DNA of 63,733 nucleotides, counting the filler, from Octopus bimaculoides (Eukaryota), in NCBI RefSeq assembly GCF_001194135.2. It is 9 parts of 7 records of this genome, joined end to end, with 100 filler letters (N's around TTAATTAATTAA, not from the genome) between each part and the next. Parts side by side here need not be neighbours in the genome. Positions count along the whole stretch, not along the records: positions 14,709 to 33,983 come from NC_068981.1; 8 more parts are not named here. One strand, 5' to 3'. The notes beneath the pieces were generated by a model, which ran no database searches, was not told the DNA's origin, and worked only from the letters and a program-made list of their open reading frames with translations. Shown piece after piece: positions 15,426 through 33,030 of the stretch. The translations under genes and the position numbers were made by a program. How positions within the stretch are numbered: the stretch's first letter is position 1; every line of letters begins with the position of its first letter.

Positions 15426-15859
15426 CTGCATAAAATGTCGTAAGGCCCTTAATGGAGACGCTTTTACGATTCTGCTAATACTGGGACTTAGGGAAAAGTA
15501 ATGACAGAAATAACGAAAGGGAATCATAGAGGGAGGAAAAGGTGGAAGATGTGANNNNNNNNNNNNNNNNNNNNNNNNNNNNNNNNNNNNNNNNNNNNNN
15601 NNNNNNNNNNNNNNNNNNNNNNNNNNNNNNNNNNNNNNNNNNNNNNNNNNNNNNNNNNNNNNNNNNNNNNNNNNNNNNNNNNNNNNNNNNNNNNNNNNNN
15701 NNNNNNNNNNNNNNNNNNNNNNNNNNNNNNNNNNNNNNNNNNNNNNNNNNNNNNNNNNNNNNNNNNNNNNNNNNNNNNNNNNNNNNNNNNNNNNNNNNNN
15801 NNNNNNNNNNNNNNNNNNNNNNNNNNNNNNNNNNNNNNNNNNNNNNNNNNNNNNNNNNN

Positions 15860-16135
15860 GCCACCATTGCGATGGCAGCATGAACGAGCAGAGAAACACA
15901 AAACGATACAAAATCCGGTGCTTGTGCACCATCGCCTCAATGCTCAAGAGATCAGCTTTTCTCAAGACCTGTGTGTCTGGAGTTTTTAAGGTCCAGCCTA
16001 CATTCAGAATGTCTCTTAGACATCTCAGATGGAAGCGTTCAAGGACTTTTACATGATGTTTGTAAAGGGTCCATGTTTCACATGAGTAAAGAATCGTTGT
16101 CAGTACACATGCACGGTACACAGCAATGTTTGTTT
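15860..16135 (-). mobile_element. RTE LINE fragment
   Basis: YRACVLTTILYSCETWTLYKHHVKVLERFHLRCLRDILNVGW..PDTQVLRKADLLSIEAM. Confidence 0.9.
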
Positions 16136-16699: not shown

Positions 16700-17640
16700 A
16701 GACTGTATCTTGTCGTCCACCAATTAGGAGTTGGAATGTTTTATCCCCTAGATGTATGACTTGATATGGACCGTCGTAGGGTGACTGGAGAGGTCTTCAT
16801 CGTGTGTCACGTCGAACGAACACAAAGTTAGCTGTGCAGAGGTCATTTGGTACGGATGATCTGGATGTACCGTGTGTCGACATGGGAATAGAGCGCAACT
16901 GGCCCACGCTGTCTCTTAGTCGAGCGAGGTACCTTTTGACATCCGAGTCTGAATTCGTATTCGGAAGGAACTCTCCTGGCACTATAAGGGGAGCACCGTA
17001 CACCATTTCCGCGGAGGAAGTGTTGAGATTTTCTTTTGGGGCAGTGCAGATTCCCAGCATTACCCATGGTAGTTGGTCGATCCAATCTGGCCCGTTAAGT
17101 CTGGTTGTCAGGGATTCATTCAAGTGGCAGTGAAATCTCTCCACTAATCCGTTGACCTGTGGGTGGTAGGCTGTTGTGCGGTTCATTGTGATTCCGAAAA
17201 GGTCACACATGTTATTCCACAACTTTGAGGTGAATTGTAAACCCCGATCGGATAAGATGCTATCTGGGACACCGAAACGGGCGACCCAGTTTGCGATGAA
17301 AGCTCGGCTGACTTCTTGTGTTTCTGTACAGCGGAAAGGGATAGCTTCAGGCCAACGGGTGTAGCGGTCGACCAAAGTCAGTAAGTACGAGCAACCCTGT
17401 GAAGGTGGTAGGCCGACAAGGTCGATGTTGATATGACTAAATCGGGCCTGAGGTGGTTCATAGTTGCCGAGGGGTGCTTTGGTGTGTTGATGGACCTTGG
17501 CTTGTTGACAGGGGATGCAGGACCTGGTCCAGTCCCCAATTTGCTTGGCCATACCGTGCCAGATAAACTGGCTTGACAGCAGCCGCCGTGTGGCTTTAGT
17601 ACCGGGGTGGGAGAGACCATGAATGATGTCGAAAGCTTTC
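16700..17640 (-). pseudogene. Gypsy integrase (HHCC, DDE core, GPY motif)
   Basis: HGLSHPG..CIPCQQAK, HINIDLVG, LLTLVDRYTRWPEAIP, WVARFGVPDSILSDRG, TTAYHPQVNGLVERFH, PYDGPY. ORF 16797-17552 is open; stop codon before the GPY motif. Confidence 0.92.
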
Positions 17641-17899
17641 TTGCGCCAGGCTGATTGGACGATTGGTCATGGCTTGCCAGTGGCTATGCCGTTAGAGCCA
17701 AAATGTACAGCCTGCAAAGAAAGTGACGTGATGGCAGTGCGGTGGGCTTTGATCTCGTCATCTGTCTGTTGGGTTGCAGCCATAGCTTCGTAATCCAAGT
17801 CTTCCGTTATTGGTGCTAGGTAGGTGTGAGAGCGGGTAGGAGCACGAGAGAGTGCGTCGGCAACTGGGTTGCCCTTGCCAGCTATGTCTGTGGTGTACT

Positions 17900-19085
17900 C
17901 AGTAATTGCCGATAGCTGTCGTTGTTGGCGTGCAGATCAAGGCTCCGAGAGCTTGCTCATAGCAAGGGGGAGTGGTTTGTGGTCTGTGAACACTGTAAAC
18001 GTGCGGCCTTCAAGGAAATACCGAAAGTGGCGGACACCTAGATGGACAGCCAGTAGTTCCCTGTCAAAAACTGTATTTCTGTTCAAGAGGTCGTAGTTGG
18101 CGGCTGAAGAAGGCGATTGGTCGCCACTGACTGTTGATGTATTGTTCTAAAACGTCCCCAATAGCTGTGTCGGATACGTCAACTGTGAACGCAGTGCGAG
18201 CTGACATATGAGGATGGGGCACCATCGTTGCTTGGACCAGGGCTTGTTTTGTGGATTCGAAGGCTGAAGTCATTGTACTATCCCACACCACCTGTCTTTT
18301 TGCACCCTCTTTTGACAGTGCCTTGTATAGGGGTCTCATCGCTTTTGCTGCAGAAGGGATGAAGCGATGGTAAAAGTTTACCAAGCCCAGAAATTGATGT
18401 GGAGCCTTGCTTGTGGTGGGGCGTGGCCAGGATAGGATAGCTTTTACTTTACCTGGCAAGGGTGTAGCGCCGGCACTTGTGATTCGATGTCTCAAGAAGT
18501 CGATTTCTGTGGCACCAAAAACGCACTTGGCAGGGTTGATTACTAAACCATTTTGTTCCAGCCTCTCAAAAATAGTCACTAGCTGCTTCTTATGTAGCTC
18601 TGCGTTTGGGTTTGCAATGAGGATGTCATCTAAGCATGGAAAGACAAAATCGAGACCTCTGCACAGTGTCCATCAAGCGTTGGAAGGATTGTGCCGCGTT
18701 TTCAGCCGAAAGGGTGTACGTAACCTTGGAGAAAACTGAGCATCCGACTAGCTGGGCTGAAACATCTTGTATATTTGGAATGAGGAAGCGGTCGGGTGTC
18801 GTATCCGCGTTGTGACGACGGTAATCTCCGCAGGGTCGATAACCTCCGTTGGATTTGGGGGCCACGTGCAGGGGGGATGACCAGGGACTGCTTGATCAGC
18901 GAACAATACCCTAGGCCTCCATATTGCCGAATTCGGCATTTGCGATTGCAAGTTTCTCTGGTGATAGACGACATGTGCAGCTGTGCACTGGGGGGGGGGA
19001 TGGTGGTGGAGATGTGGTGTGTCACCTCGTGGCGGTCTGTAGGTTTGGAGAATGTCGGAGTGGTGAGATTGAGGCGACTAACAAG
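17900..19085 (-). pseudogene. Gypsy RT/RNase H remnant with internal deletion
   Basis: SSPWSSPLH.APK..GGYRPCGDYRR.NA.TTPDR..IP, AAQSFQRLMD, GLVINPAKCVFG..IDFL, QFLGLVNFYHRFIP, TVDVSDTAIG.VLEQ..WRPIAFFSRQL..EQKYS. The segment after FSK (IDL..AY..TA..TPFG) is missing. Confidence 0.9.
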
Positions 19086-19211
19086 NNNNNNNNNNNNNNN
19101 NNNNNNNNNNNNNNNNNNNNNNNNNNNNNNNNNNNNNNNNNNNNNNNNNNNNNNNNNNNNNNNNNNNNCCCCGCAAATCCACCAGTCGCAAATGTGCTCG
19201 AAGAAAGGTGT

Positions 19212-19895
19212 TCAACGATGTCCGGCCCTGGAGTTTCCCTGGTTCGCTGGTGAAGGGATCCTGAAGCTACATGTTTGTTTACATTTTATCGCCTTTTTAC
19301 CAAACTTTGCATGGTAGAAGCATAGGTCATCACGCTTAACCTTACCCCGTCTCGAAGCCGACCCTATGGCGTTGGCCAGGACACCACTGGATAAAAAATG
19401 CCTGTCAACTGCTTTTGCTAATTGCCGCAGGTCCTTGATTTCGGTTTGAATTATGAGGGCCTGGACCTGGGGTGGCAGCTTGCGGAGGAATATTTCTTTA
19501 AACAAAAAAAAGGAAGGTGACTCACCGGGGGGAGGGTACTAATGCCAACATCCTGTCCATCAGTTCTGACGGCTTGGAATCGCCTAATTCCTCCACCAGT
19601 ATCCTGACTGCCACTTCTCTTTCACTGCGTCGGAATGTATCCACTAGTGTATCTTTCAATATGGCGTATTTGTTCGTTGGTGGGCGATGAGTTAAAATGT
19701 TCAGCACCTTCGTTGCCGTGCCTTCGTCTAGTGCCCCCACAACGTGCGAGTACTTCGTTTGGTCGGCCGTTATCTTGTTTATATCGAATTGAGCTTCCGC
19801 CTGCACGAACCACAACTCAGCCCTCTTAGACCAGAACTGTGGCAACCTCAGTGGTGTTTTGTAGGATTAAGCATGATGACCTGTGCTTCTACCAT
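19212..19895 (-). pseudogene. Gypsy gag remnant
   Basis: PQFWSKRAELWFVQAEAQF..ITADQTKYSHVV.AL..LGDSKPSELMDRML, FLRKLPPQVQ, CFYHAKFGKKAIKCKQTC (C-x2-H-x9-C-x3-C). Frameshifts near 19850 and ~19505. Confidence 0.9.
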
Positions 19896-21180: not shown

Positions 21181-22539
21181 CACACACATACAGACACACA
21201 TATATATAACAAGATTCTTTACTGTGTGGCATATTTTGTGAGCTTATCAGTAGGTAGTAATAAAAATTAGAAAGAGATAAGCTGTTATGACTGGATTTGG
21301 TTGCTGCAGATACATGGGAAGTCTTGATAAGATTGTTGATTGTCTTTAGCTTCAGATTAAGCTGATCTTTTGATAAGAAACATTCCTCCCGTGACTATCC
21401 CATAGTTTTGCTTGTGTACGTAGTAGCCAGCATAACATTTTCTGATGTGTTAACTTTAGGTTGGCTGAGTTTGATATGAGGGAACTTTCTCAGCTACTTC
21501 TTGTAGGTAAAGCCTTCTTTTTGAACTTTCTTTAATTTTTTTTCTGAATTCTTGAAACAGGTGATGGAGCTACAGACCAACCAGTTGCTATCTGACTCAC
21601 AGACTTCTACACTTTTTACCAAATTTCAATCTGAGGTCGCTTCGCATGCTCTTCCTTGTCATTTTTATTTGGCATCTGAAGATGAAATAGAACATGACTG
21701 TCAACAGAAATGCTTATACAGACATGATTTTTTGAGTTTTCTAGTGATAAACATTACATTTTGGAAAATCCTATTTACTAAAGATAATAATGTGAAGGTA
21801 TCACTAAAGTTTCTCTGGTTACTGTACATGCATGTATGAAGTTGAGTTATCCGCATGAATGATATTAATGTATTCTTTACAGATATTGATTTACAATTTT
21901 ACACATACATGTGTATCTTTCACATGCACAGGAAATACTCAACCCCTGTTCAAGCATAGTTATGATAATACAGTCTGTCTACCACCACTTGGGTTCTGTT
22001 TTGGTCAGGAAAGCACAGAGGAAAGTAGTTTTGTTGGCTGAGAAATATTATTGATGCTTTTAAGAAATTGACTTACTTTTTGTCTCCCAGTATTTGTTGT
22101 GCGTACATCATTCAAACCGCGACAGACTCGGAAAAGGTAGGAGAATTATTATTTTTGTAGTTTAGTAATATGTCTGTCTTGAGGAAGTAGATCTATGATA
22201 CAAGATATTCTAACCTTGAACATCACCCTTTCTATTGACATGCAGTATCCACCAATGTATTTCCTTTCTAAGAATTCAAGGAATGATNNNNNNNNNNNNN
22301 NNNNNNNNNNNNNNNNNNNNNNNNNNNNNNNNNNNNNNNNNNNNNNNNNNNNNNNNNNNNNNNNNNNNNNNNNNNNNNNNNNNNNNNNNNNNNNNNNNNN
22401 NNNNNNNNNNNNNNNNNNNNNNNNNNNNNNNNNNNNNNNNNNNNNNNNNNNNNNNNNNNNNNNNNNNNNNNNNNNNNNNNNNNNNNNNNNNNNNNATCTT
22501 ATTTTATTTTTCTCACTGATTTAGGAACTCCTATAAATG

Positions 22540-23250
22540 GTGTTGCCATACGTTTCCTGTTTGTTGTTATTTTTGTGGTTTCACACATTTTCCTCCAGAA
22601 GAAGTTTATGTCTTCTCATGAAGAAGTTCCTGTGATGTTCACTGCTCCTCCTCTCATGTCTTTGTCTACTGCTGCCAGGTCCTCGATAAATTTTTCGTTT
22701 ACTGTTTTTCTCTTGGTTATTCTCTTCTGATTTTGGGGTTTCTCACTGACAGATTTTAGCTCCTGCTTGAGGGCGAGCAGTTCGTAATTGAGTATTATCT
22801 TTTTGTTATCTACAAACATCACTTCTATCTCCTTCTTCAGTTTTCATTGGTGAGCTTTTAATACCGTGTCTGGTAGTCTTTTGCTTACTTTCATGTAGAA
22901 TACTCTCTCTTCGAGAGAGCGCTTCGAATTCACAGTTATTTTTTTCTTGGAAAATCTTAGCAAGAGCATACTTCACCGCTATATAACACTGACTACTATT
23001 ACAACTACTACAATAATAGTTGCGATTTTGCCTGCTATTTACCATAGTCGTAGTAGAGGGACAATGGTCAGTTATTTTAGCTTGTAATGTAGTCTGGCTG
23101 ATGGATGGTATAGTATCTGTTGGAATGTTGTTAACTGCGAAACCACGTAGGATTCCAACACCGTCCACGTTTTCGTTTATATTGTTTGAGAGAAGGTTAA
23201 TTTCAGATCTTTTTCCAAAATATCTCCTTCATTGAAAATAATACTGAAAC
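22540..23250 (-). mobile_element. Probable R4/Dong-clade ORF N-terminal (pre-RT) remnant
   Basis: ELLALKQELKSVSEK..KRITKRKTVNEKFIED..EDINFFWRKM resembles the 'LKQ..N..F..FW..IW' pre-RT block of R4 elements. Degenerate. Confidence 0.5.
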
Positions 23251-23764
23251 TCTGTATTTTAAACAATAGTCTTGATTATTCCATAATATAAGTTTTTACA
23301 AAAGAAAGACAAAGAAAAGAAAAAATATAAAGGGAAGAAAAAGAACGAGAAACATCAATGCAGCTCCAATTATTTCAGTTCGTTGCATACCACAAGGCTC
23401 AACGGAACCTACTAAAGCAAGACAACACTTCGCAGCATAACCACGGTCGATGGCGAGGGTAAGGGGTTTGAAAAACCAAGCGCCCACACAGGCATCACCT
23501 AACAGAATGTCCTAGCTGATGAGACGACCTGTTGACTTCACTGCTGATCAACTGAATTTCTTTGTCTGTCTTCACAATCACACGAAGAAAAACAACATCC
23601 TAACTCTCCACAGTTTCGTCGTTCGTCCTAACGATATCTTTCCTTGTAAAACGAAGAAAATAAATACCTCCTTAACTGAATATCCCTCGACCAGGTTTAC
23701 GTCTTTATCACTAATCCATCTTCGTTACATATATGTTTCTCTCTCTTCTGTTTTTAATCATTAA

Positions 23765-28085: not shown

Positions 28086-29759
28086 CATCTATATTTTCAG
28101 CTGCACCTTAGAACACCAATGGTTTTGATGTCTCTTTTGTGGATTAGGTATTTAGTAGCAATCTCCCGTTCTTGGACTGTAAATGCATAGCTTACGAAGC
28201 GTAGTGTGACGTAACGGTCTTAAGTCCAAGAGAAGCTTCGTTTCACGTCTGTGTTACTCTCATTTTCAAGTCTACTAGAAACATACTCATATATGGTCAT
28301 TTTTTCTGCTATGCTGAGCGTTCCATTTTTAATCTGTGTGAAATGAAATTCATACTCATTTCGCATATCTTTGATTTCTTTTCCAAAAATCTGAATCAAC
28401 TAAGATGTCGTTACTAGACCTAGAGTACTTTTCTGTAAATATGAAGATGAATTGTAAGCCTTGTCTAGCACTTTACTCCAAAATACAAGAGCAACCCAAG
28501 AATTCATAGTGACTTAGTGTTTCCAGTATACCCTTTGCCTTACGTGCTGCTTTGGGGCGCAGTTTTATTATCCCACCATCCACACTTCTGTGTAGAGCAA
28601 CTACTTGTGCTGATAAATTCTGCAAGACTGCCTCTGCTGCCGACTTTCTAAATGTCCATATAGCATTAGAAAGTTTGTTTAGAGTCACTGTGAAAGGTTT
28701 GATCTGACTGCGTTATTCTACTTTCAGTACTGAAAGACGAGATAAGTTGCCGGAAGAGAAAGGTATAGGCACATTCTAGAGTTCCAAAATTGATTAGAAC
28801 CAAAATATAAAAAACAAAAGACGCTGAAACTTGTTTTTGCAAAGTATAGTTGACAGTAGGCTGTTGCTAGACTATTGTAAACTTTAGGCAAGTGTTTTAT
28901 GAAGTTGCTGTTCTGTACTAGAAGTTGTGTGTTGAAAGGTTATGACGTCAGGGTTTGTTTTGGTTCTTCAGATGTTGGAAACCACCAACATATCACTGGA
29001 GAATGAGAAAACAGTTCAAAAACCATGGAAGGCTGATGAAATAAAGTAATGACTCCAGACAGTTCTTCCAAGACCAAGCGATGAACAAAGGAGAAATAAA
29101 AAAAAATTCGACTTTAATCGCACAAGTGATCTAAATAGTTTTTTTTTAATTGTTGAACAGGCGCCAATTTTGGGAAATGTGCTTGCGGGAAAGGATCATT
29201 CCCTCGCTTCCTTATTAGCAAAACCAATGGAATTATACAAGAGAGAGAGAGAGAAAGATTTACATCAGTAAGATTTTTAACATTTAATGAGTTTCCTACG
29301 CTAGAGTTGATCAGAGCGACTGTAAGAAAGCTAACTTACTTCTATATCAAAAGTTGATCTGAGATTTATATATTAATAACCTAGAACACTGAACGCTGGT
29401 TATTGCAGATAAAAAAAACACATTTGTTCCATTCTAGTATTGAGGAGTTTCACAATCTCGTAGAATATGATGTTAATCGACTGAAATAAAGAGAACTTTT
29501 TTTATGCCATCTATTTTCAAACATCCGTATTTTCAGTTCAAATATAGCTTGATTCAGTTATGATGCTAATTTTAATATTTTGAACTAGGTAGCATCTAAT
29601 TCCATAGAATATCTGTCATCTCTTGCATCCAGTGAATAGTAAATATTAACCTTGAAACGGGGATATGTTTAAACATAAAAGAGATAGGTACTCGGCAACA
29701 GCAAAATGCATTGTTTTCTCAGCTACATTGACCGCAACATTTATGTTTATTTCGTAACA

Positions 29760-29982
29760 TTTGAAATATCTACGAAATAAAGAAACGGAATTGAATCTTC
29801 ATTATTTCATATGCTTCGTTTTCTATATTTTTACAGATAACCAAATATGGCTGCCGTACAGACGACACTAACAGCAACCAGTTCTCTTATTCTTTCAATC
29901 ATTTTTATTATCACACTGACATCACTAAACATCGATGCGAAGGAGCTCGACAATAATTGCGAAATTAAAATTCCTCCCAATA
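29760..29982 (+). pseudogene. Upstream duplicate of the 5' end of the membrane-protein gene (ATG at 29847), truncated by an N gap
   Basis: 29847-29982 is identical to 30371-30506 (136 nt). The upstream intron/acceptor sequence is homologous but diverged. Confidence 0.7.
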
Positions 29983-30370
29983 NNNNNNNNNNNNNNNNNN
30001 NNNNNNNNNNNNNNNNNNNNNNNNNNNNNNNNNNNNNNNNNNNNNNNNNNNNNNNNNNNNNNNNNNNNNNNNNNNNNNNNNNNNNNNNNNNNNNNNNNNN
30101 NNNNNNNNNNNNNNNNNNNNNNNNNNNNNNNNNNNNNNNNNNNNNNNNNNNNAGTTTCTGCCTTCTCCTTCAGTTTTTACATCCGGTTTAAAATAAATCT
30201 TCTTCATTTCGAATAGTTACAGAAAAATGTAACTAAAATGATTCTTCATTAGTTACTTTCAGTTTTATAAAGAATATTTTCTGTTTGAAATATCTATGGA
30301 ATAATTAACCTAAAACGAATCTTCATTATTTTATGTGTTCTATTTTTTTTATTATTACAGATAACGAAAT

Positions 30371-32560
30371 ATGGCTGCCGTACAGACGACACTAACAGCA
30401 ACCAGTTCTCTTATTCTTTCAATCATTTTTATTATCACACTGACATCACTAAACATCGATGCGAAGGAGCTCGACAATAATTGCGAAATTAAAATTCCTC
30501 CCAATATCAGTGAGATTTTATCTCGTTTAGTAAAACTGGAAAAAAAAGTTTTCAATTTTGAAGTCCATTTATCAAACAAGTCACTTGATGACCTTCTTAA
30601 TCCTGTACCATTAGATTATTTTGCAAATGCGAGGCATTTTACGTGGATTCCAGATAAATCAGGCGCTGTAACTCTATATAAAGCTTTCCCCTATGATTTT
30701 TCAATGCACACTTTTAATATGTTAGGCGTTTACGTTGCTAAACAAAGGATTGATATGAATATAACTTGTGGAAAACAAAATATTCAAAGACACGATTTAA
30801 TATATTTGATATTCGAGGAATTGAAAAGAATCATATTTATTGACAAATTGCACATGGGAGAATCTGGATACATGTGTTTTTTTATAAATTTGTCTTATGA
30901 TATGAAGAAGAACAGCCCTGGCACATTTGAAGCTCAGAAAAGAATTGGTATAAATCGAGAGATACTGAAGAACTATTGTTGCAGGATCTATAAAAACGGA
31001 AGCCATGTTTATCACTCCAAATCTATTTGTTCAGGAAAAATCATTGAGAATGCTATGTTTCAGAATTATACACGTATCGTCGGAGCCGTTTTGTGGGCTA
31101 TATTACCATTAATTATTAGTTTCGTATCAAAAGCTAAATTACCTTCACATTCCCGTCAACTCAATCTGCCACTGTTTGCTCACGATGAATTCTTATTTAC
31201 AATTATAAACACGTTGCCAAACAAATCCGAGTGGATCAATGGAAAACATAATATTTACACATTCTCTCATTTTGTGTCTTGGATATTTTGTTTCCACAAT
31301 TCCTCTTTCTTTGCCTCAAGACTAAGAAGATTCCTGTGTATTCTATTCTCTCTTTCAGTAATTGTTCTGGATCTTTTGATGCATTACTTCTTTTTATATG
31401 ATACAATAAAAATACTATTCCAAGATGGTATACCATTGGGCTATCGCGCTCTAATATTAGGAATCCCAGAAAGTTATGAGAATACAGATGGCTTCTTCGG
31501 GGGTCCCTTTTTGTGTTTGATTGGCTACATATTTTTCAGTTTTATTCTTTTCGTTCTTCCCAGTCGTTTAAGTGAGACTATCGCTTATAATACATTACAT
31601 CAAAGATCCACTTGCACATTTCTCATACAAAATATGAGTTTATTAGAGAAGTATGGCAGTTTGAATGTTTCTACACTACAGGATTATGATCTACTCTATG
31701 CAATAATGAAAGCTAATATTTCTACTGCTTTAAACCCAAATTTCTGGCATTTAATAATTTATACTTGGTTTAACCGTATAAAGAAAATTTGGTTGTATTA
31801 CTACGAAAGAAATATTTTCTGGCAATTCATTACACTTTGTCCCTTTGTTTCCATTACAATTTTATTTGCAGTATTTTCTGTCTGTGAATTATTTCTGTGC
31901 CTCTTGTATTATGGAATCCCAATTCTTTATTTGGTTTTAACTTTACCATTAAGTTATTTCAGAGTTTATATTTTCCCTCTGTATTTGAATCCTAACTATA
32001 TTTTCAAGATTATTGCTTTCATTTTAACATTCATATCGTTTCTATGTTTTCTAATTTGGGGAATTTATTCAATCTATATATTTCTTACAAGTCTTGATAT
32101 CCTTTGCGAGTATATATTTTCAATAGCTGTTGCAGTACTTGCTAAGCCTGGTACCGTTGGTGAAACATGGTTCGTTTCCATGTTTCTTGTTTATGGTATT
32201 GCAATTATAAAAGCTGTTCAGAAACAGTATGACTTTATTCTGCTTGAATCTATAAAGCTCACCAAAATTCTTCGTCCAAATTTAGTAAAGTCAAAATATG
32301 GGGAGGAATTCATAAACGCCAAGTTGTTCAAGACAATTATTAACCATCATTTTCCATTGAGATTCGAGATTGGTAAATCTATTGTAAAACTGTTTCTAAT
32401 TGTAACCTTTTTCTTTGCTTGCAACAATATAATAAGTCTAGAAATCTTGGGCTTATCAACATTCACAAAGATTACTTTGATGTTGATGACGTCATTGATA
32501 CCTAAATTTTTGTCTATAATAAATACAGATCGTAGTTTAACACTAACCATGTTAGATAAA
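30371..32560 (+). CDS. Uncharacterised multi-pass membrane protein (signal peptide, ~200-aa Cys-containing ectodomain, ~9-10 hydrophobic segments); 3' end in gap
   Basis: 730 uninterrupted codons in very AT-rich DNA. Hydrophobic N-terminus (LILSIIFIITLTSL), ectodomain with six Cys and sequons NIS, NKS, NIT, NLS, NGS, NYT, then repeated long hydrophobic stretches. Splice acceptor (T-rich..TTACAG, 30360) 10 nt upstream of the ATG. No transposon motifs. Confidence 0.88.
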
Positions 32561-32971
32561 NNNNNNNNNNNNNNNNNNNNNNNNNNNNNNNNNNNNNNNN
32601 NNNNNNNNNNNNNNNNNNNNNNNNNNNNNNNNNNNNNNNNNNNNNNNNNNNNNNNNNNNNNNNNNNNNNNNNNNNNNNNNNNNNNNNNNNNNNNNNNNNN
32701 NNNNNNNNNNNNNNNNNNNNNNNNNNNNNNNNNNNNNNNNNNNNNNNNNNNNNNNNNNNNNNNNNNNNNNNNNNNNNNNNNNNNNNNNNNNNNNNNNNNN
32801 NNNNNNNNNNNNNNNNNNNNNNNNNNNNNNNNNNNNNNNNNNNNNNNNNNNNNNNNNNNNNNNNNNNNNNNNNNNNNNNNNNNNNNNNNNNNNNNNNNNN
32901 NNNNNNNNNNNNNNNNNNNNNNNNNNNNNNNNNNNNNNNNNNNNNNNNNNNNNNNNNNNNNNNNNNNNNNN

Positions 32972-33030
<59 letters not shown>

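What the first reader, a model, noticed from the sequence alone, without database searches (positions are those of the whole stretch)
30371..32560. Orphan single-exon-type receptor/channel-like membrane protein: best candidate for an undescribed system
Seen: 730 open codons in a TE desert, a signal-peptide-like start, a ~200-aa ectodomain with six Cys and six N-glycosylation sequons, and ~9-10 hydrophobic segments including two very long ones that probably hold two helices each. Established: cephalopod chemotactile receptors are Cys-loop/4-TM proteins and rhodopsin-class GPCRs have DRY/NPxxY motifs; neither signature is present. Inference: an ectodomain plus polytopic core, no intron in the visible CDS and evidence of local duplication fit a lineage-expanded sensory receptor, channel or transporter family. 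I have an unverified impression of similarity to uncharacterised mollusc/cnidarian membrane proteins.
Basis: partly seen in the sequence, partly recalled or inferred. Interest (0 to 1): 0.75.

Follow-up and report, generated by a model that had tools for sequence, protein, structure and literature searches.

The report
Uncharacterised spiralian multi-pass membrane glycoprotein gene
This is a real, intact octopus gene for a large membrane glycoprotein from a family found across molluscs, annelids, brachiopods and ribbon worms that nobody has characterised and that resembles no known protein family or solved structure, so its function is still open.

Summary
Positions 30371-32560 (+) are 730 open codons (chance about 1e-23). 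They encode a signal-peptide-like start, a roughly 200-aa ectodomain with six Cys and six N-glycosylation sequons, and a 9-10-helix membrane core. An assembly gap hides only the last 1-17 codons.

It is not an orphan. The closest relatives are octopus 'uncharacterized' proteins (83-85% identity; at least 10 paralogues, and the four located are single-exon genes within 3.6 Mb of one O. sinensis chromosome). A profile search found 132 clusters (mostly 750-880 aa). Every named member is uncharacterised and comes from bivalves, a gastropod, an annelid, a brachiopod or a nemertean.

No Pfam family matches any of about 80 members scanned. No PDB chain matches by sequence or profile. A confident AlphaFold2 model (pLDDT 85, pTM 0.82) has no Foldseek match in PDB or BFVD.

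The only public functional label, UniRef's 'Receptor for retinol uptake STRA6', fails every test: Pfam PF14752, hmmsearch, hhalign (probability 2% or less) and fold. GPCR and Cys-loop signatures are absent. dN/dS of about 0.4 indicates a constrained, functional gene.

Best reading: an undescribed spiralian-wide family of surface or secretory-pathway polytopic glycoproteins. It is probably a ligand-binding ectodomain coupled to a transport or channel-like core. That mechanism is inferred, not shown.

The parts
30371..32560 (+). Coding sequence, codons 1-730, of the membrane glycoprotein. It is truncated at its 3' end by the assembly gap.
   Evidence: Open frame. 83-85% aa identity to octopus proteins of 731-747 aa. 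89.3% nt identity to the O. sinensis LOC118765918 CDS. dN/dS about 0.4.
30371..30463 (+). Signal peptide or N-terminal hydrophobic anchor (aa 1-31). The likely cleavage site is after NIDA31.
   Evidence: Hydropathy. Helix 7-26 followed by a low-pLDDT linker at 25-34 in the model. Cleavage is inferred from the -3/-1 rule and was not run through SignalP.
30464..31066 (+). Extracellular or luminal alpha/beta ectodomain (aa 32-232) with six Cys and six N-glycosylation sequons.
   Evidence: C38, C133, C169 and C203 are 96-100% conserved and C204 and C220 are 84-89% conserved across 93 family members. Sequon density is 2.1 per 100 aa here against 0.4-0.8 in the longer loops. pLDDT is mostly 85-96.
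31067..32524 (+). Helical membrane core (aa 233-718). Helices: TM1 233-253, TM2 313-351, TM3 375-395, TM4 482-515, TM5 517-539, long helix 543-591, 593-634, 663-688 and 697-718. Two basic helical inserts, presumed cytosolic, lie at 399-481 and 618-665.
   Evidence: AF2 secondary structure. Family-averaged hydropathy and K+R counts. Conserved S316-R317..R320, G377-G378-P379, P397, F458-W459, R469, E506, P517, P593, Y608, Y620, P662, P711.
30335..30360 (+). Polypyrimidine tract plus AG splice-acceptor-like site, ending 10 nt before the ATG. It implies an upstream non-coding 5'UTR exon.
   Evidence: The motif (y)n-(t/c)ag|a(t/a)aac(c/g)aaatATG is conserved in both window copies and in four O. sinensis paralogues. 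Use as an acceptor is inferred.
29847..29982 (+). Second copy of the first 45 codons (100% identical) with its own acceptor-like flank. It is cut off by the N gap 29983-30152.
   Evidence: Its upstream flank (29392-29846) is collinear with the flank of O. sinensis LOC118765918 at 86.6%.
32561..32971 (.). Assembly gap (411 N) that hides the last roughly 1-17 codons, the stop codon and the start of the 3'UTR.
   Evidence: The homologue alignment shows the C-terminal tails.

Best explanation
Positions 30371-32560 hold a functional octopus gene with its whole CDS in one exon and a 5'UTR intron just upstream. It encodes a member of an undescribed protein family that is widespread in Spiralia (cephalopods, bivalves, gastropods, annelids, brachiopods, nemerteans).

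The protein enters the secretory pathway through an N-terminal signal sequence. It displays a disulfide-bonded, N-glycosylated alpha/beta ectodomain of about 200 aa on the extracellular or luminal side. It is anchored by a core of nine long helices, most likely N-out/C-in, with two basic helical inserts that are probably cytosolic.

The mechanism I consider most likely is a 'receptor-transporter' or gated pore. The ectodomain would capture an extracellular ligand or substrate. The helical core, which carries one near-invariant acidic residue (E506, in the CxxE...YYGxP turn between TM4 and TM5) and conserved Gly/Pro hinges, would pass or gate a small molecule or ion.

Shown: gene integrity, family membership, architecture, purifying selection, and the absence of similarity to any characterised family. 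Inferred: signal-peptide cleavage, the 9-TM topology, surface localisation, and the transport or gating function. The confidence given (0.55) covers the whole statement: the identity part alone I hold at about 0.9, the transport or gating mechanism alone at about 0.35-0.4.
For: Integrity and selection: the frame is open. dN/dS is 0.37-0.47 against four O. sinensis paralogues, and 0.30 for the ectodomain against 0.43 for the core.

Family: 19 octopod hits. 132 representative clusters, 111 of them at E<=1e-10, most 750-880 aa and aligned end to end. Named members are all 'uncharacterized' and come from Mytilus, Ostrea, Mercenaria, Haliotis, Owenia, Lingula and Tubulanus.

Architecture: it is conserved in distant members. 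The AF2 model built from 93 sequences has pLDDT 85 and pTM 0.82. Sequons are enriched in the ectodomain, and K+R is enriched in loops 399-481 and 618-665 and in the C-terminus, which fits N-out/C-in with nine passes.

Conserved residues are mostly Cys, Pro, Gly and aromatics, plus R317, R320, N455, R469 and E506. There is no His/Asp/Ser constellation of the kind seen in membrane enzymes.

Genomic organisation: single-exon CDSs at 205.03, 205.12, 205.33 and 208.6 Mb of O. sinensis chromosome CM016859.1.

No known relative: Pfam is negative for about 80 members. PDB sequence and profile searches are negative. Foldseek against PDB and BFVD gives no hit better than E=0.28, with TM-scores of at most 0.11 normalised to the query.
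Against: No functional, expression or localisation data exist for any member (literature searches). The 49-residue hydrophobic helix 543-591 could be two passes rather than one, which would change the topology. The N-terminal segment could be an uncleaved anchor. Divergence between paralogues is even along the protein, so nothing marks the ectodomain as a diversifying ligand-binding site. No internal repeat typical of many transporters was detected. Remote homology that only HHpred against full profile libraries, or Foldseek against AlphaFold DB, could detect was not testable here.
Confidence: 0.55

Rival explanations
1. It is a lineage-expanded chemosensory or environment-sensing receptor, for example a ligand-gated channel used in suckers, skin or olfactory organ.
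For: Octopods have at least 10 paralogues. The four located are intronless CDSs spread over 3.6 Mb of one chromosome. Selection is moderately relaxed, with dN/dS about 0.4. The identity pattern among paralogues is mosaic, which suggests gene conversion. Bivalves carry many divergent clusters.
Against: The ectodomain diverges no faster than the core and has the lower dN/dS, 0.30 against 0.43. The family is ancient and its architecture is conserved across four phyla. I could obtain no tissue-expression data. There is no similarity to any known chemoreceptor class: no Pfam hit, no Cx13C, no DRY/NPxxY.
Confidence: 0.15
2. It is a membrane-embedded enzyme or processing factor of the secretory pathway (for example a transferase with a luminal domain), not a surface receptor or transporter.
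For: Known ER and Golgi enzymes also combine a signal sequence, a luminal glycosylated domain and a polytopic core; this comparison rests on my own knowledge. Long helices and conserved Arg residues at the presumed cytosolic face (R317, R320, R469) could bind a charged donor substrate.
Against: No conserved His, Asp or Ser catalytic set was found. Conserved positions are mainly structural: Cys, Pro, Gly and aromatics. There is no Pfam match to any transferase, MBOAT, acyltransferase_3 or GT-C family in about 80 members. There is no fold match in the PDB.
Confidence: 0.15
3. It is a divergent STRA6-type retinol-binding-protein receptor, as UniRef names two O. bimaculoides paralogues.
For: The UniRef label 'Receptor for retinol uptake STRA6' sits on P0005 and P0007. 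Length (about 700 aa) and the probable 9-TM N-out/C-in topology are comparable (the STRA6 topology is from my own knowledge of PDB 5SY1).
Against: PF14752 matches none of the family, including the two labelled proteins, at E<=1. It does match every genuine STRA6 retrieved. hmmsearch of the family profile against human and zebrafish STRA6 gives negative bit scores. hhalign probability is 0.6% against 2 STRA6 sequences and 2.2% against 13. 5SY1 does not appear among the listed Foldseek matches.
Confidence: 0.03
4. It is not a host gene: a transposon- or virus-derived ORF, a decaying pseudogene, or an assembly artefact.
For: The CDS is intronless and multicopy. Two assembly gaps flank the ORF and its 5' end is duplicated. 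Retrotransposon remnants lie in the same piece.
Against: There is no RT, integrase, transposase or capsid domain in it. The frame is intact, with dN/dS about 0.4. The flank is collinear with that of the O. sinensis gene. The splice acceptor upstream of the ATG is conserved in paralogues. The full-length architecture is conserved across four phyla.
Confidence: 0.03

Closest known systems
Octopus 'uncharacterized protein' LOC118765918, LOC115211026, LOC115232508 and LOC115209402 (O. sinensis), LOC106875165, LOC106877666 and LOC106877664 (O. bimaculoides), and an Argonauta hians homologue
   Same: Same family and same architecture end to end, with 53-85% aa identity. The O. sinensis paralogues located are single-exon CDSs with a conserved acceptor 10 nt before the ATG. 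LOC118765918 is the likely orthologue: 89.3% nt identity, collinear flank, dS 0.22.
   Different: The window copy differs by 15-17% at the protein level from every database entry, so it comes from another species or is an unannotated paralogue. Its immediate 5' flank resembles a different paralogue, LOC115232508. None of these proteins has a known function.
Uncharacterised spiralian homologues (Mytilus, Ostrea, Mercenaria, Haliotis, Owenia, Lingula, Tubulanus)
   Same: A hydrophobic N-terminal start in many members, a roughly 200-250-aa Cys-containing ectodomain, and the same order of hydrophobic segments. Shared motifs include SRxxR, GGP, FW, CxxE..YYGxP and several invariant Pro.
   Different: Only 15-24% identity to the octopus protein. 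Usually 50-130 aa longer.
STRA6 / RBP_receptor (PF14752; PDB 5SY1)
   Same: A polytopic protein of about 670 aa with nine TM helices and N-out/C-in topology (own knowledge of 5SY1). Two octopus paralogues carry this name in UniRef.
   Different: No Pfam, HMM, profile-profile or fold similarity. STRA6 has no signal peptide followed by a 200-aa Cys-rich N-terminal ectodomain (own knowledge).
Choline-transporter-like SLC44/CTL family (yeast Pns1, PDB 9f63; human CTL1, PDB 7wwb)
   Same: About 10 TM helices, with a glycosylated, Cys-rich extracellular domain of roughly 200 aa following the first hydrophobic segment (own knowledge). Pns1 is the top Foldseek hit.
   Different: The hit is not significant: E=0.76, TM-score 0.07-0.11, rmsd 27.7 A. 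PF04515 does not match any of 60 members even at E<=10.
Transmembrane domains of type IV ABC exporters (PCAT1, TmrAB, McjD, CydDC)
   Same: Very long helices that probably extend beyond the membrane. These proteins make up most of the weak Foldseek hits.
   Different: All hits have E>1 and TM-score about 0.1 or less. There is no nucleotide-binding domain and no ABC_membrane Pfam match.

Membership tests
Unnamed spiralian SP-ectodomain-9TM family (this family) | Full-length, significant profile match to other members | tested here: met
   Octopod hits with E=0 down to 1e-126. 111 clusters at E<=1e-10, most aligned over positions about 30-740 of the profile.
Unnamed spiralian SP-ectodomain-9TM family (this family) | Conserved ectodomain cysteines and core motifs (SRxxR, GGP, FW, R469, E506, YYGxP, P593, Y608, Y620, P662, P711) | tested here: met
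   All are present in the window protein and 90-100% conserved in the 93-sequence alignment.
STRA6 / RBP_receptor | Match to Pfam PF14752 | tested here: not met
   No hit at E<=1-10 in 11 octopod and 60 diverse members. Genuine STRA6 proteins all carry PF14752.
STRA6 / RBP_receptor | Profile-profile or HMM similarity to STRA6 sequences | tested here: not met
   hmmsearch bit scores are negative. hhalign probability is 0.6% and 2.2%.
STRA6 / RBP_receptor | Fold similarity to PDB 5SY1 | tested here: not met
   5SY1 does not appear among the listed Foldseek PDB matches for a pLDDT-85 model.
STRA6 / RBP_receptor | Binding of holo-RBP and calmodulin; retinol transport | not testable with these tools
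   Needs biochemistry.
Rhodopsin-class GPCR | Seven TM helices with DRY and NPxxY motifs; 7tm_1 Pfam match | tested here: not met
   No [DE]R[YFH] or NPxxY motif. Nine to ten helices. No Pfam match.
Cys-loop receptors, including cephalopod chemotactile receptors | Cx13C loop in a beta-sandwich ligand-binding domain followed by four TM helices; Neur_chan Pfam matches | tested here: not met
   No Cx13C. The ectodomain is mixed alpha/beta and is followed by nine helices. No Pfam match.
SLC44 / choline-transporter-like | Match to Pfam PF04515 and fold similarity to CTL1 or Pns1 | tested here: not met
   No Pfam match. Foldseek E=0.76-8 with TM-score 0.13 or less.
Transposable-element or viral ORF | RT, integrase, transposase, capsid or envelope domains; terminal repeats | tested here: not met
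   No such Pfam domain in the ORF or its homologues. BFVD fold search is negative. I did not search specifically for terminal repeats around the gene.

The most novel reading that the evidence does not exclude
The gene represents an unrecognised, spiralian-wide superfamily of polytopic membrane glycoproteins with a fold absent from the PDB. It would be a new class of receptor-coupled transporter or channel that has expanded independently in octopods and bivalves.
Probability: 0.4. Interest if true: 0.7.

Novelty: categorically new. Interest (0 to 1): 0.55.

Why it matters
A protein family that spans at least four spiralian phyla has more than 100 clusters at 50% identity, a confidently predicted architecture and clear purifying selection. 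Yet it has no Pfam entry, no solved relative, no literature, and one misleading database name (STRA6). That is a concrete gap in membrane-protein knowledge.

If the fold and function are new, it adds a class of surface transporter, channel or receptor specific to a major animal clade that includes commercially and neurobiologically important molluscs. It would also give a tractable target: an intronless CDS that is easy to clone, with many natural variants.

The practical lesson is narrower. The 'retinol receptor' annotation on octopus paralogues should not be propagated.

I chose 'categorically new' in the sense that no characterised relative was found with the tools at hand. It does not mean a new biological system has been demonstrated.

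Tried and rejected
- **AF2 with only 11 octopod sequences.** This gave a useless model (pLDDT 42.6). It was superseded by the 93-sequence run.
- **Word-index homologue search with the deep profile.** It returned only the same 19 octopod proteins and added nothing.
- **STRA6 hypothesis, prompted by the UniRef label.** Rejected by Pfam, hmmsearch, two hhalign runs and Foldseek. My human STRA6 sequence was recalled from memory. I validated it first against 5SY1 (E=2.6e-169) and against primate STRA6 (96-98% identity).
- **SLC44/CTL and ABC-exporter TMD resemblance, from the top Foldseek rows.** Rejected as non-significant.
- **Viral origin.** The BFVD fold search was negative.
- **Internal duplication of a four-helix unit (TM2-5 against TM6-9).** hhalign probability below 1%.
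- **Domain fusions in longer homologues (P0056, P0065, P0084, P0100, P0133).** No Pfam domain in their extensions. The gelsolin fusion P0019 looks like a gene-model artefact.
- **Consistent weak Pfam hits across 60 members.** No family was hit by more than one member.
- **Organism of unnamed relatives via run accessions, and literature by LOC or accession numbers.** Nothing found.
- **Further family fragments in the piece.** tblastn found only the 45-codon duplicate.

Full report
**Observation.** The frame from 30371 to 32560 (+) is open for 730 codons and then runs into a 411-N assembly gap. At 32% GC the chance of such a run is about 1e-23.
- a hydrophobic N-terminus ending in NIDA|KE;
- an ectodomain (aa 32-232) with six cysteines (38, 133, 169, 203, 204, 220) and six N-x-S/T sequons;
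- a series of hydrophobic segments, two of them about 50 residues long.

DRY, NPxxY and Cx13C motifs are absent. The first 136 nt of the CDS, with an acceptor-like flank, are repeated at 29847-29982, directly before another gap.

**Close relatives.** The first homologue search returned 19 proteins, all from octopods (O. sinensis, O. bimaculoides, O. vulgaris, Argonauta hians). They are 53-85% identical and most are 731-747 aa long. NCBI calls them 'uncharacterized', and none has a precomputed Pfam domain except one fusion gene model. The alignment shows the window protein lacks only the last 1-17 residues.

In O. sinensis the four paralogues I located are uninterrupted CDSs of 2196-2223 bp. 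They lie at 205.03, 205.12, 205.33 and 208.6 Mb of chromosome CM016859.1.

The window CDS is 89.3% identical in DNA to LOC118765918, and the flank upstream of the duplicated start is collinear with that gene's flank.

All copies keep a pyrimidine tract and an AG 10 nt before the ATG. This indicates a 5'UTR intron with the entire CDS in the last exon.

Pairwise dN/dS is 0.37-0.47. The genes are constrained but evolving fairly fast.

**Family breadth.** A profile of 11 octopod sequences, scored against 1.84 billion representatives, found 132 clusters (111 at E<=1e-10). Most are 750-880 aa and aligned nearly end to end. Cluster look-ups gave names for members from:
- bivalves: Mytilus (four species), Ostrea edulis, Mercenaria mercenaria;
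- a gastropod: Haliotis asinina;
- an annelid: Owenia fusiformis;
- a brachiopod: Lingula anatina;
- a nemertean: Tubulanus polymorphus.

Every one is 'uncharacterized' or 'hypothetical'. No cnidarian, arthropod or vertebrate member turned up among the 30 clusters examined. Simple hydropathy shows the same order of segments in distant members. So the gene is not an orphan: it belongs to an old spiralian family with independent expansions.

**Architecture.** With the 93-sequence alignment, AlphaFold2 gave a confident model: pLDDT 85, pTM 0.82, and 376 residues at or above 90. The octopod-only alignment had failed. The model shows:
- a helix at 7-26 followed by a disordered linker;
- a mixed alpha/beta ectodomain (aa 38-225);
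- TM1 at 233-253, then a disordered loop at 260-284. Some paralogues carry tandem-repeat insertions in this loop;
- long helices at 313-351, 375-395, 482-515, 517-539, 543-591, 593-634, 663-688 and 697-718;
- helical inserts at 400-478 and 636-660.

Across the family, sequon density is 2.1 per 100 aa in the ectodomain against 0.4-0.8 in the longer loops. K+R is enriched in 399-481, 618-665 and the C-terminal tail. By the positive-inside rule this fits an N-out/C-in protein with nine passes, provided 543-591 crosses the membrane once.

Conserved positions are the ectodomain cysteines, W92, many Pro, Gly and aromatic residues, and a few polar residues: R317, R320, N455, R469 and E506. Divergence is spread evenly over ectodomain and core. 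I found no internal repeat.

**Comparison with known families.**
- Pfam-A matched nothing credible in the window protein, in 11 octopod members, in 20 further members, or in 60 diverse members scanned at E<=10. In that last scan no family was hit by more than one member.
- phmmer and two profile searches against all PDB chain sequences were negative.
- Foldseek of the confident model gave no PDB match better than E=0.76 and no BFVD match better than E=0.28. TM-scores normalised to the query were about 0.1. The top rows (Pns1/CTL1 and ABC-exporter TMDs) reflect only long helices.

**The STRA6 label.** The one functional name attached to this family, UniRef's 'Receptor for retinol uptake STRA6' on two O. 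bimaculoides paralogues, was tested directly. I validated a recalled human STRA6 sequence against 5SY1 and against primate STRA6 proteins, all of which carry PF14752. The family HMM then scored human and zebrafish STRA6 with negative bits. hhalign gave probabilities of 0.6% and 2.2%. 5SY1 did not appear among the listed Foldseek matches. The label is unsupported.

**Interpretation.** What is shown: an intact, selected, intronless-CDS gene of a spiralian-wide polytopic glycoprotein family with no characterised relative detectable here. What is inferred:
- signal-peptide cleavage;
- 9-TM N-out/C-in topology;
- surface exposure of the glycosylated ectodomain;
- function.

Two observations bear on function. 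Conserved residues are structural plus a single near-invariant acidic residue at the outer TM4-TM5 turn. No catalytic-looking constellation is present. I therefore favour an ectodomain-coupled transporter or gated pore (about 0.35-0.4) over a dedicated chemosensory receptor (0.15), a secretory-pathway enzyme (0.15), a true STRA6 relative (0.03), or a TE or artefact (0.03). The remainder is unassigned. No paper in the searchable library mentions these loci.

**Limits.** AlphaFold DB, HHpred libraries, SignalP, DeepTMHMM and expression data were not available, so remote homology to a characterised family remains possible. 'Categorically new' here means that no known kind was found by Pfam, by PDB sequence or profile search, or by PDB/BFVD fold search. 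It does not mean a new system has been demonstrated.

Noticed in passing
window 29392-29982 versus 30153-30506: The gene's first 136 coding nt occur twice and are 100% identical, but their upstream flanks differ. Copy A's flank is collinear with O. sinensis LOC118765918 (86.6%). The 220 bp before copy B are 88-92% identical to the flank of a different paralogue, LOC115232508. Identity along the CDS is mosaic among paralogues. This suggests either two adjacent paralogues with one hidden in the 170-N gap, gene conversion, or a chimeric join.
   Followed up: partly
window 16797-19845 (- strand): Degenerate LTR-retrotransposon remnants: integrase core (rve, E=9e-14), an RT-linked RNase H domain (RT_RNaseH_2, E=1e-17) and a DUF7041 domain. 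They lie in a block of raised GC (0.47-0.52, against about 0.3 around the gene) and are broken into separate ORFs with an N gap at 19086-19168.
   Followed up: partly
window 15860-16121 (- strand): An ORF fragment (MYRACVLTTILYSCETWTLYKHH...) that looks to me like the C-terminal part of a LINE reverse transcriptase. It has no Pfam hit and abuts the N gap 15555-15859.
   Followed up: partly
window 21186-23499, and L001 5915-7785, 17207-17742 and 19596-21125: An interspersed repeat upstream of the gene is present at least three times within 22 kb of the O. sinensis locus (77-88% identity). Part of the apparent synteny is therefore repeat-derived.
   Followed up: no
window 32972-33027: A (CA)n microsatellite lies immediately after the 411-N gap, probably the reason the assembly broke there. 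Nothing after the gap matches the 3' end or downstream flank of the O. sinensis gene.
   Followed up: partly
P0016, P0011 and P0017 (octopus paralogues), loop between TM1 and TM2: Some paralogues carry tandem repeats of about 24 aa (NEEVHLEILPSSPNSLEPNHQQST...) inserted in the disordered loop that is short in the window protein (low pLDDT at 260-284).
   Followed up: no
P0019 (O. vulgaris 'cytoplasmic-like', 1010 aa) and P0005/P0007 (UniRef 'Receptor for retinol uptake STRA6'): Two database annotation problems. First, a gene model fuses a protein with a gelsolin-repeat domain (PF00626) to fragments of this family. Second, the STRA6 name on two paralogues fails every test made here.
   Followed up: yes
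L005 (ENA ERZ21867824 contig, 267 kb), L006 and L007 (Logan contigs from runs ERR14857108 and ERR3431203): The nearest non-octopod-annotated relatives are P0020 (33% identity, single 2247-bp ORF) and P0023 and P0024 (23-24%). They come from unnamed assemblies. They may be other cephalopods or molluscs, but I could not identify the organisms.
   Followed up: partly
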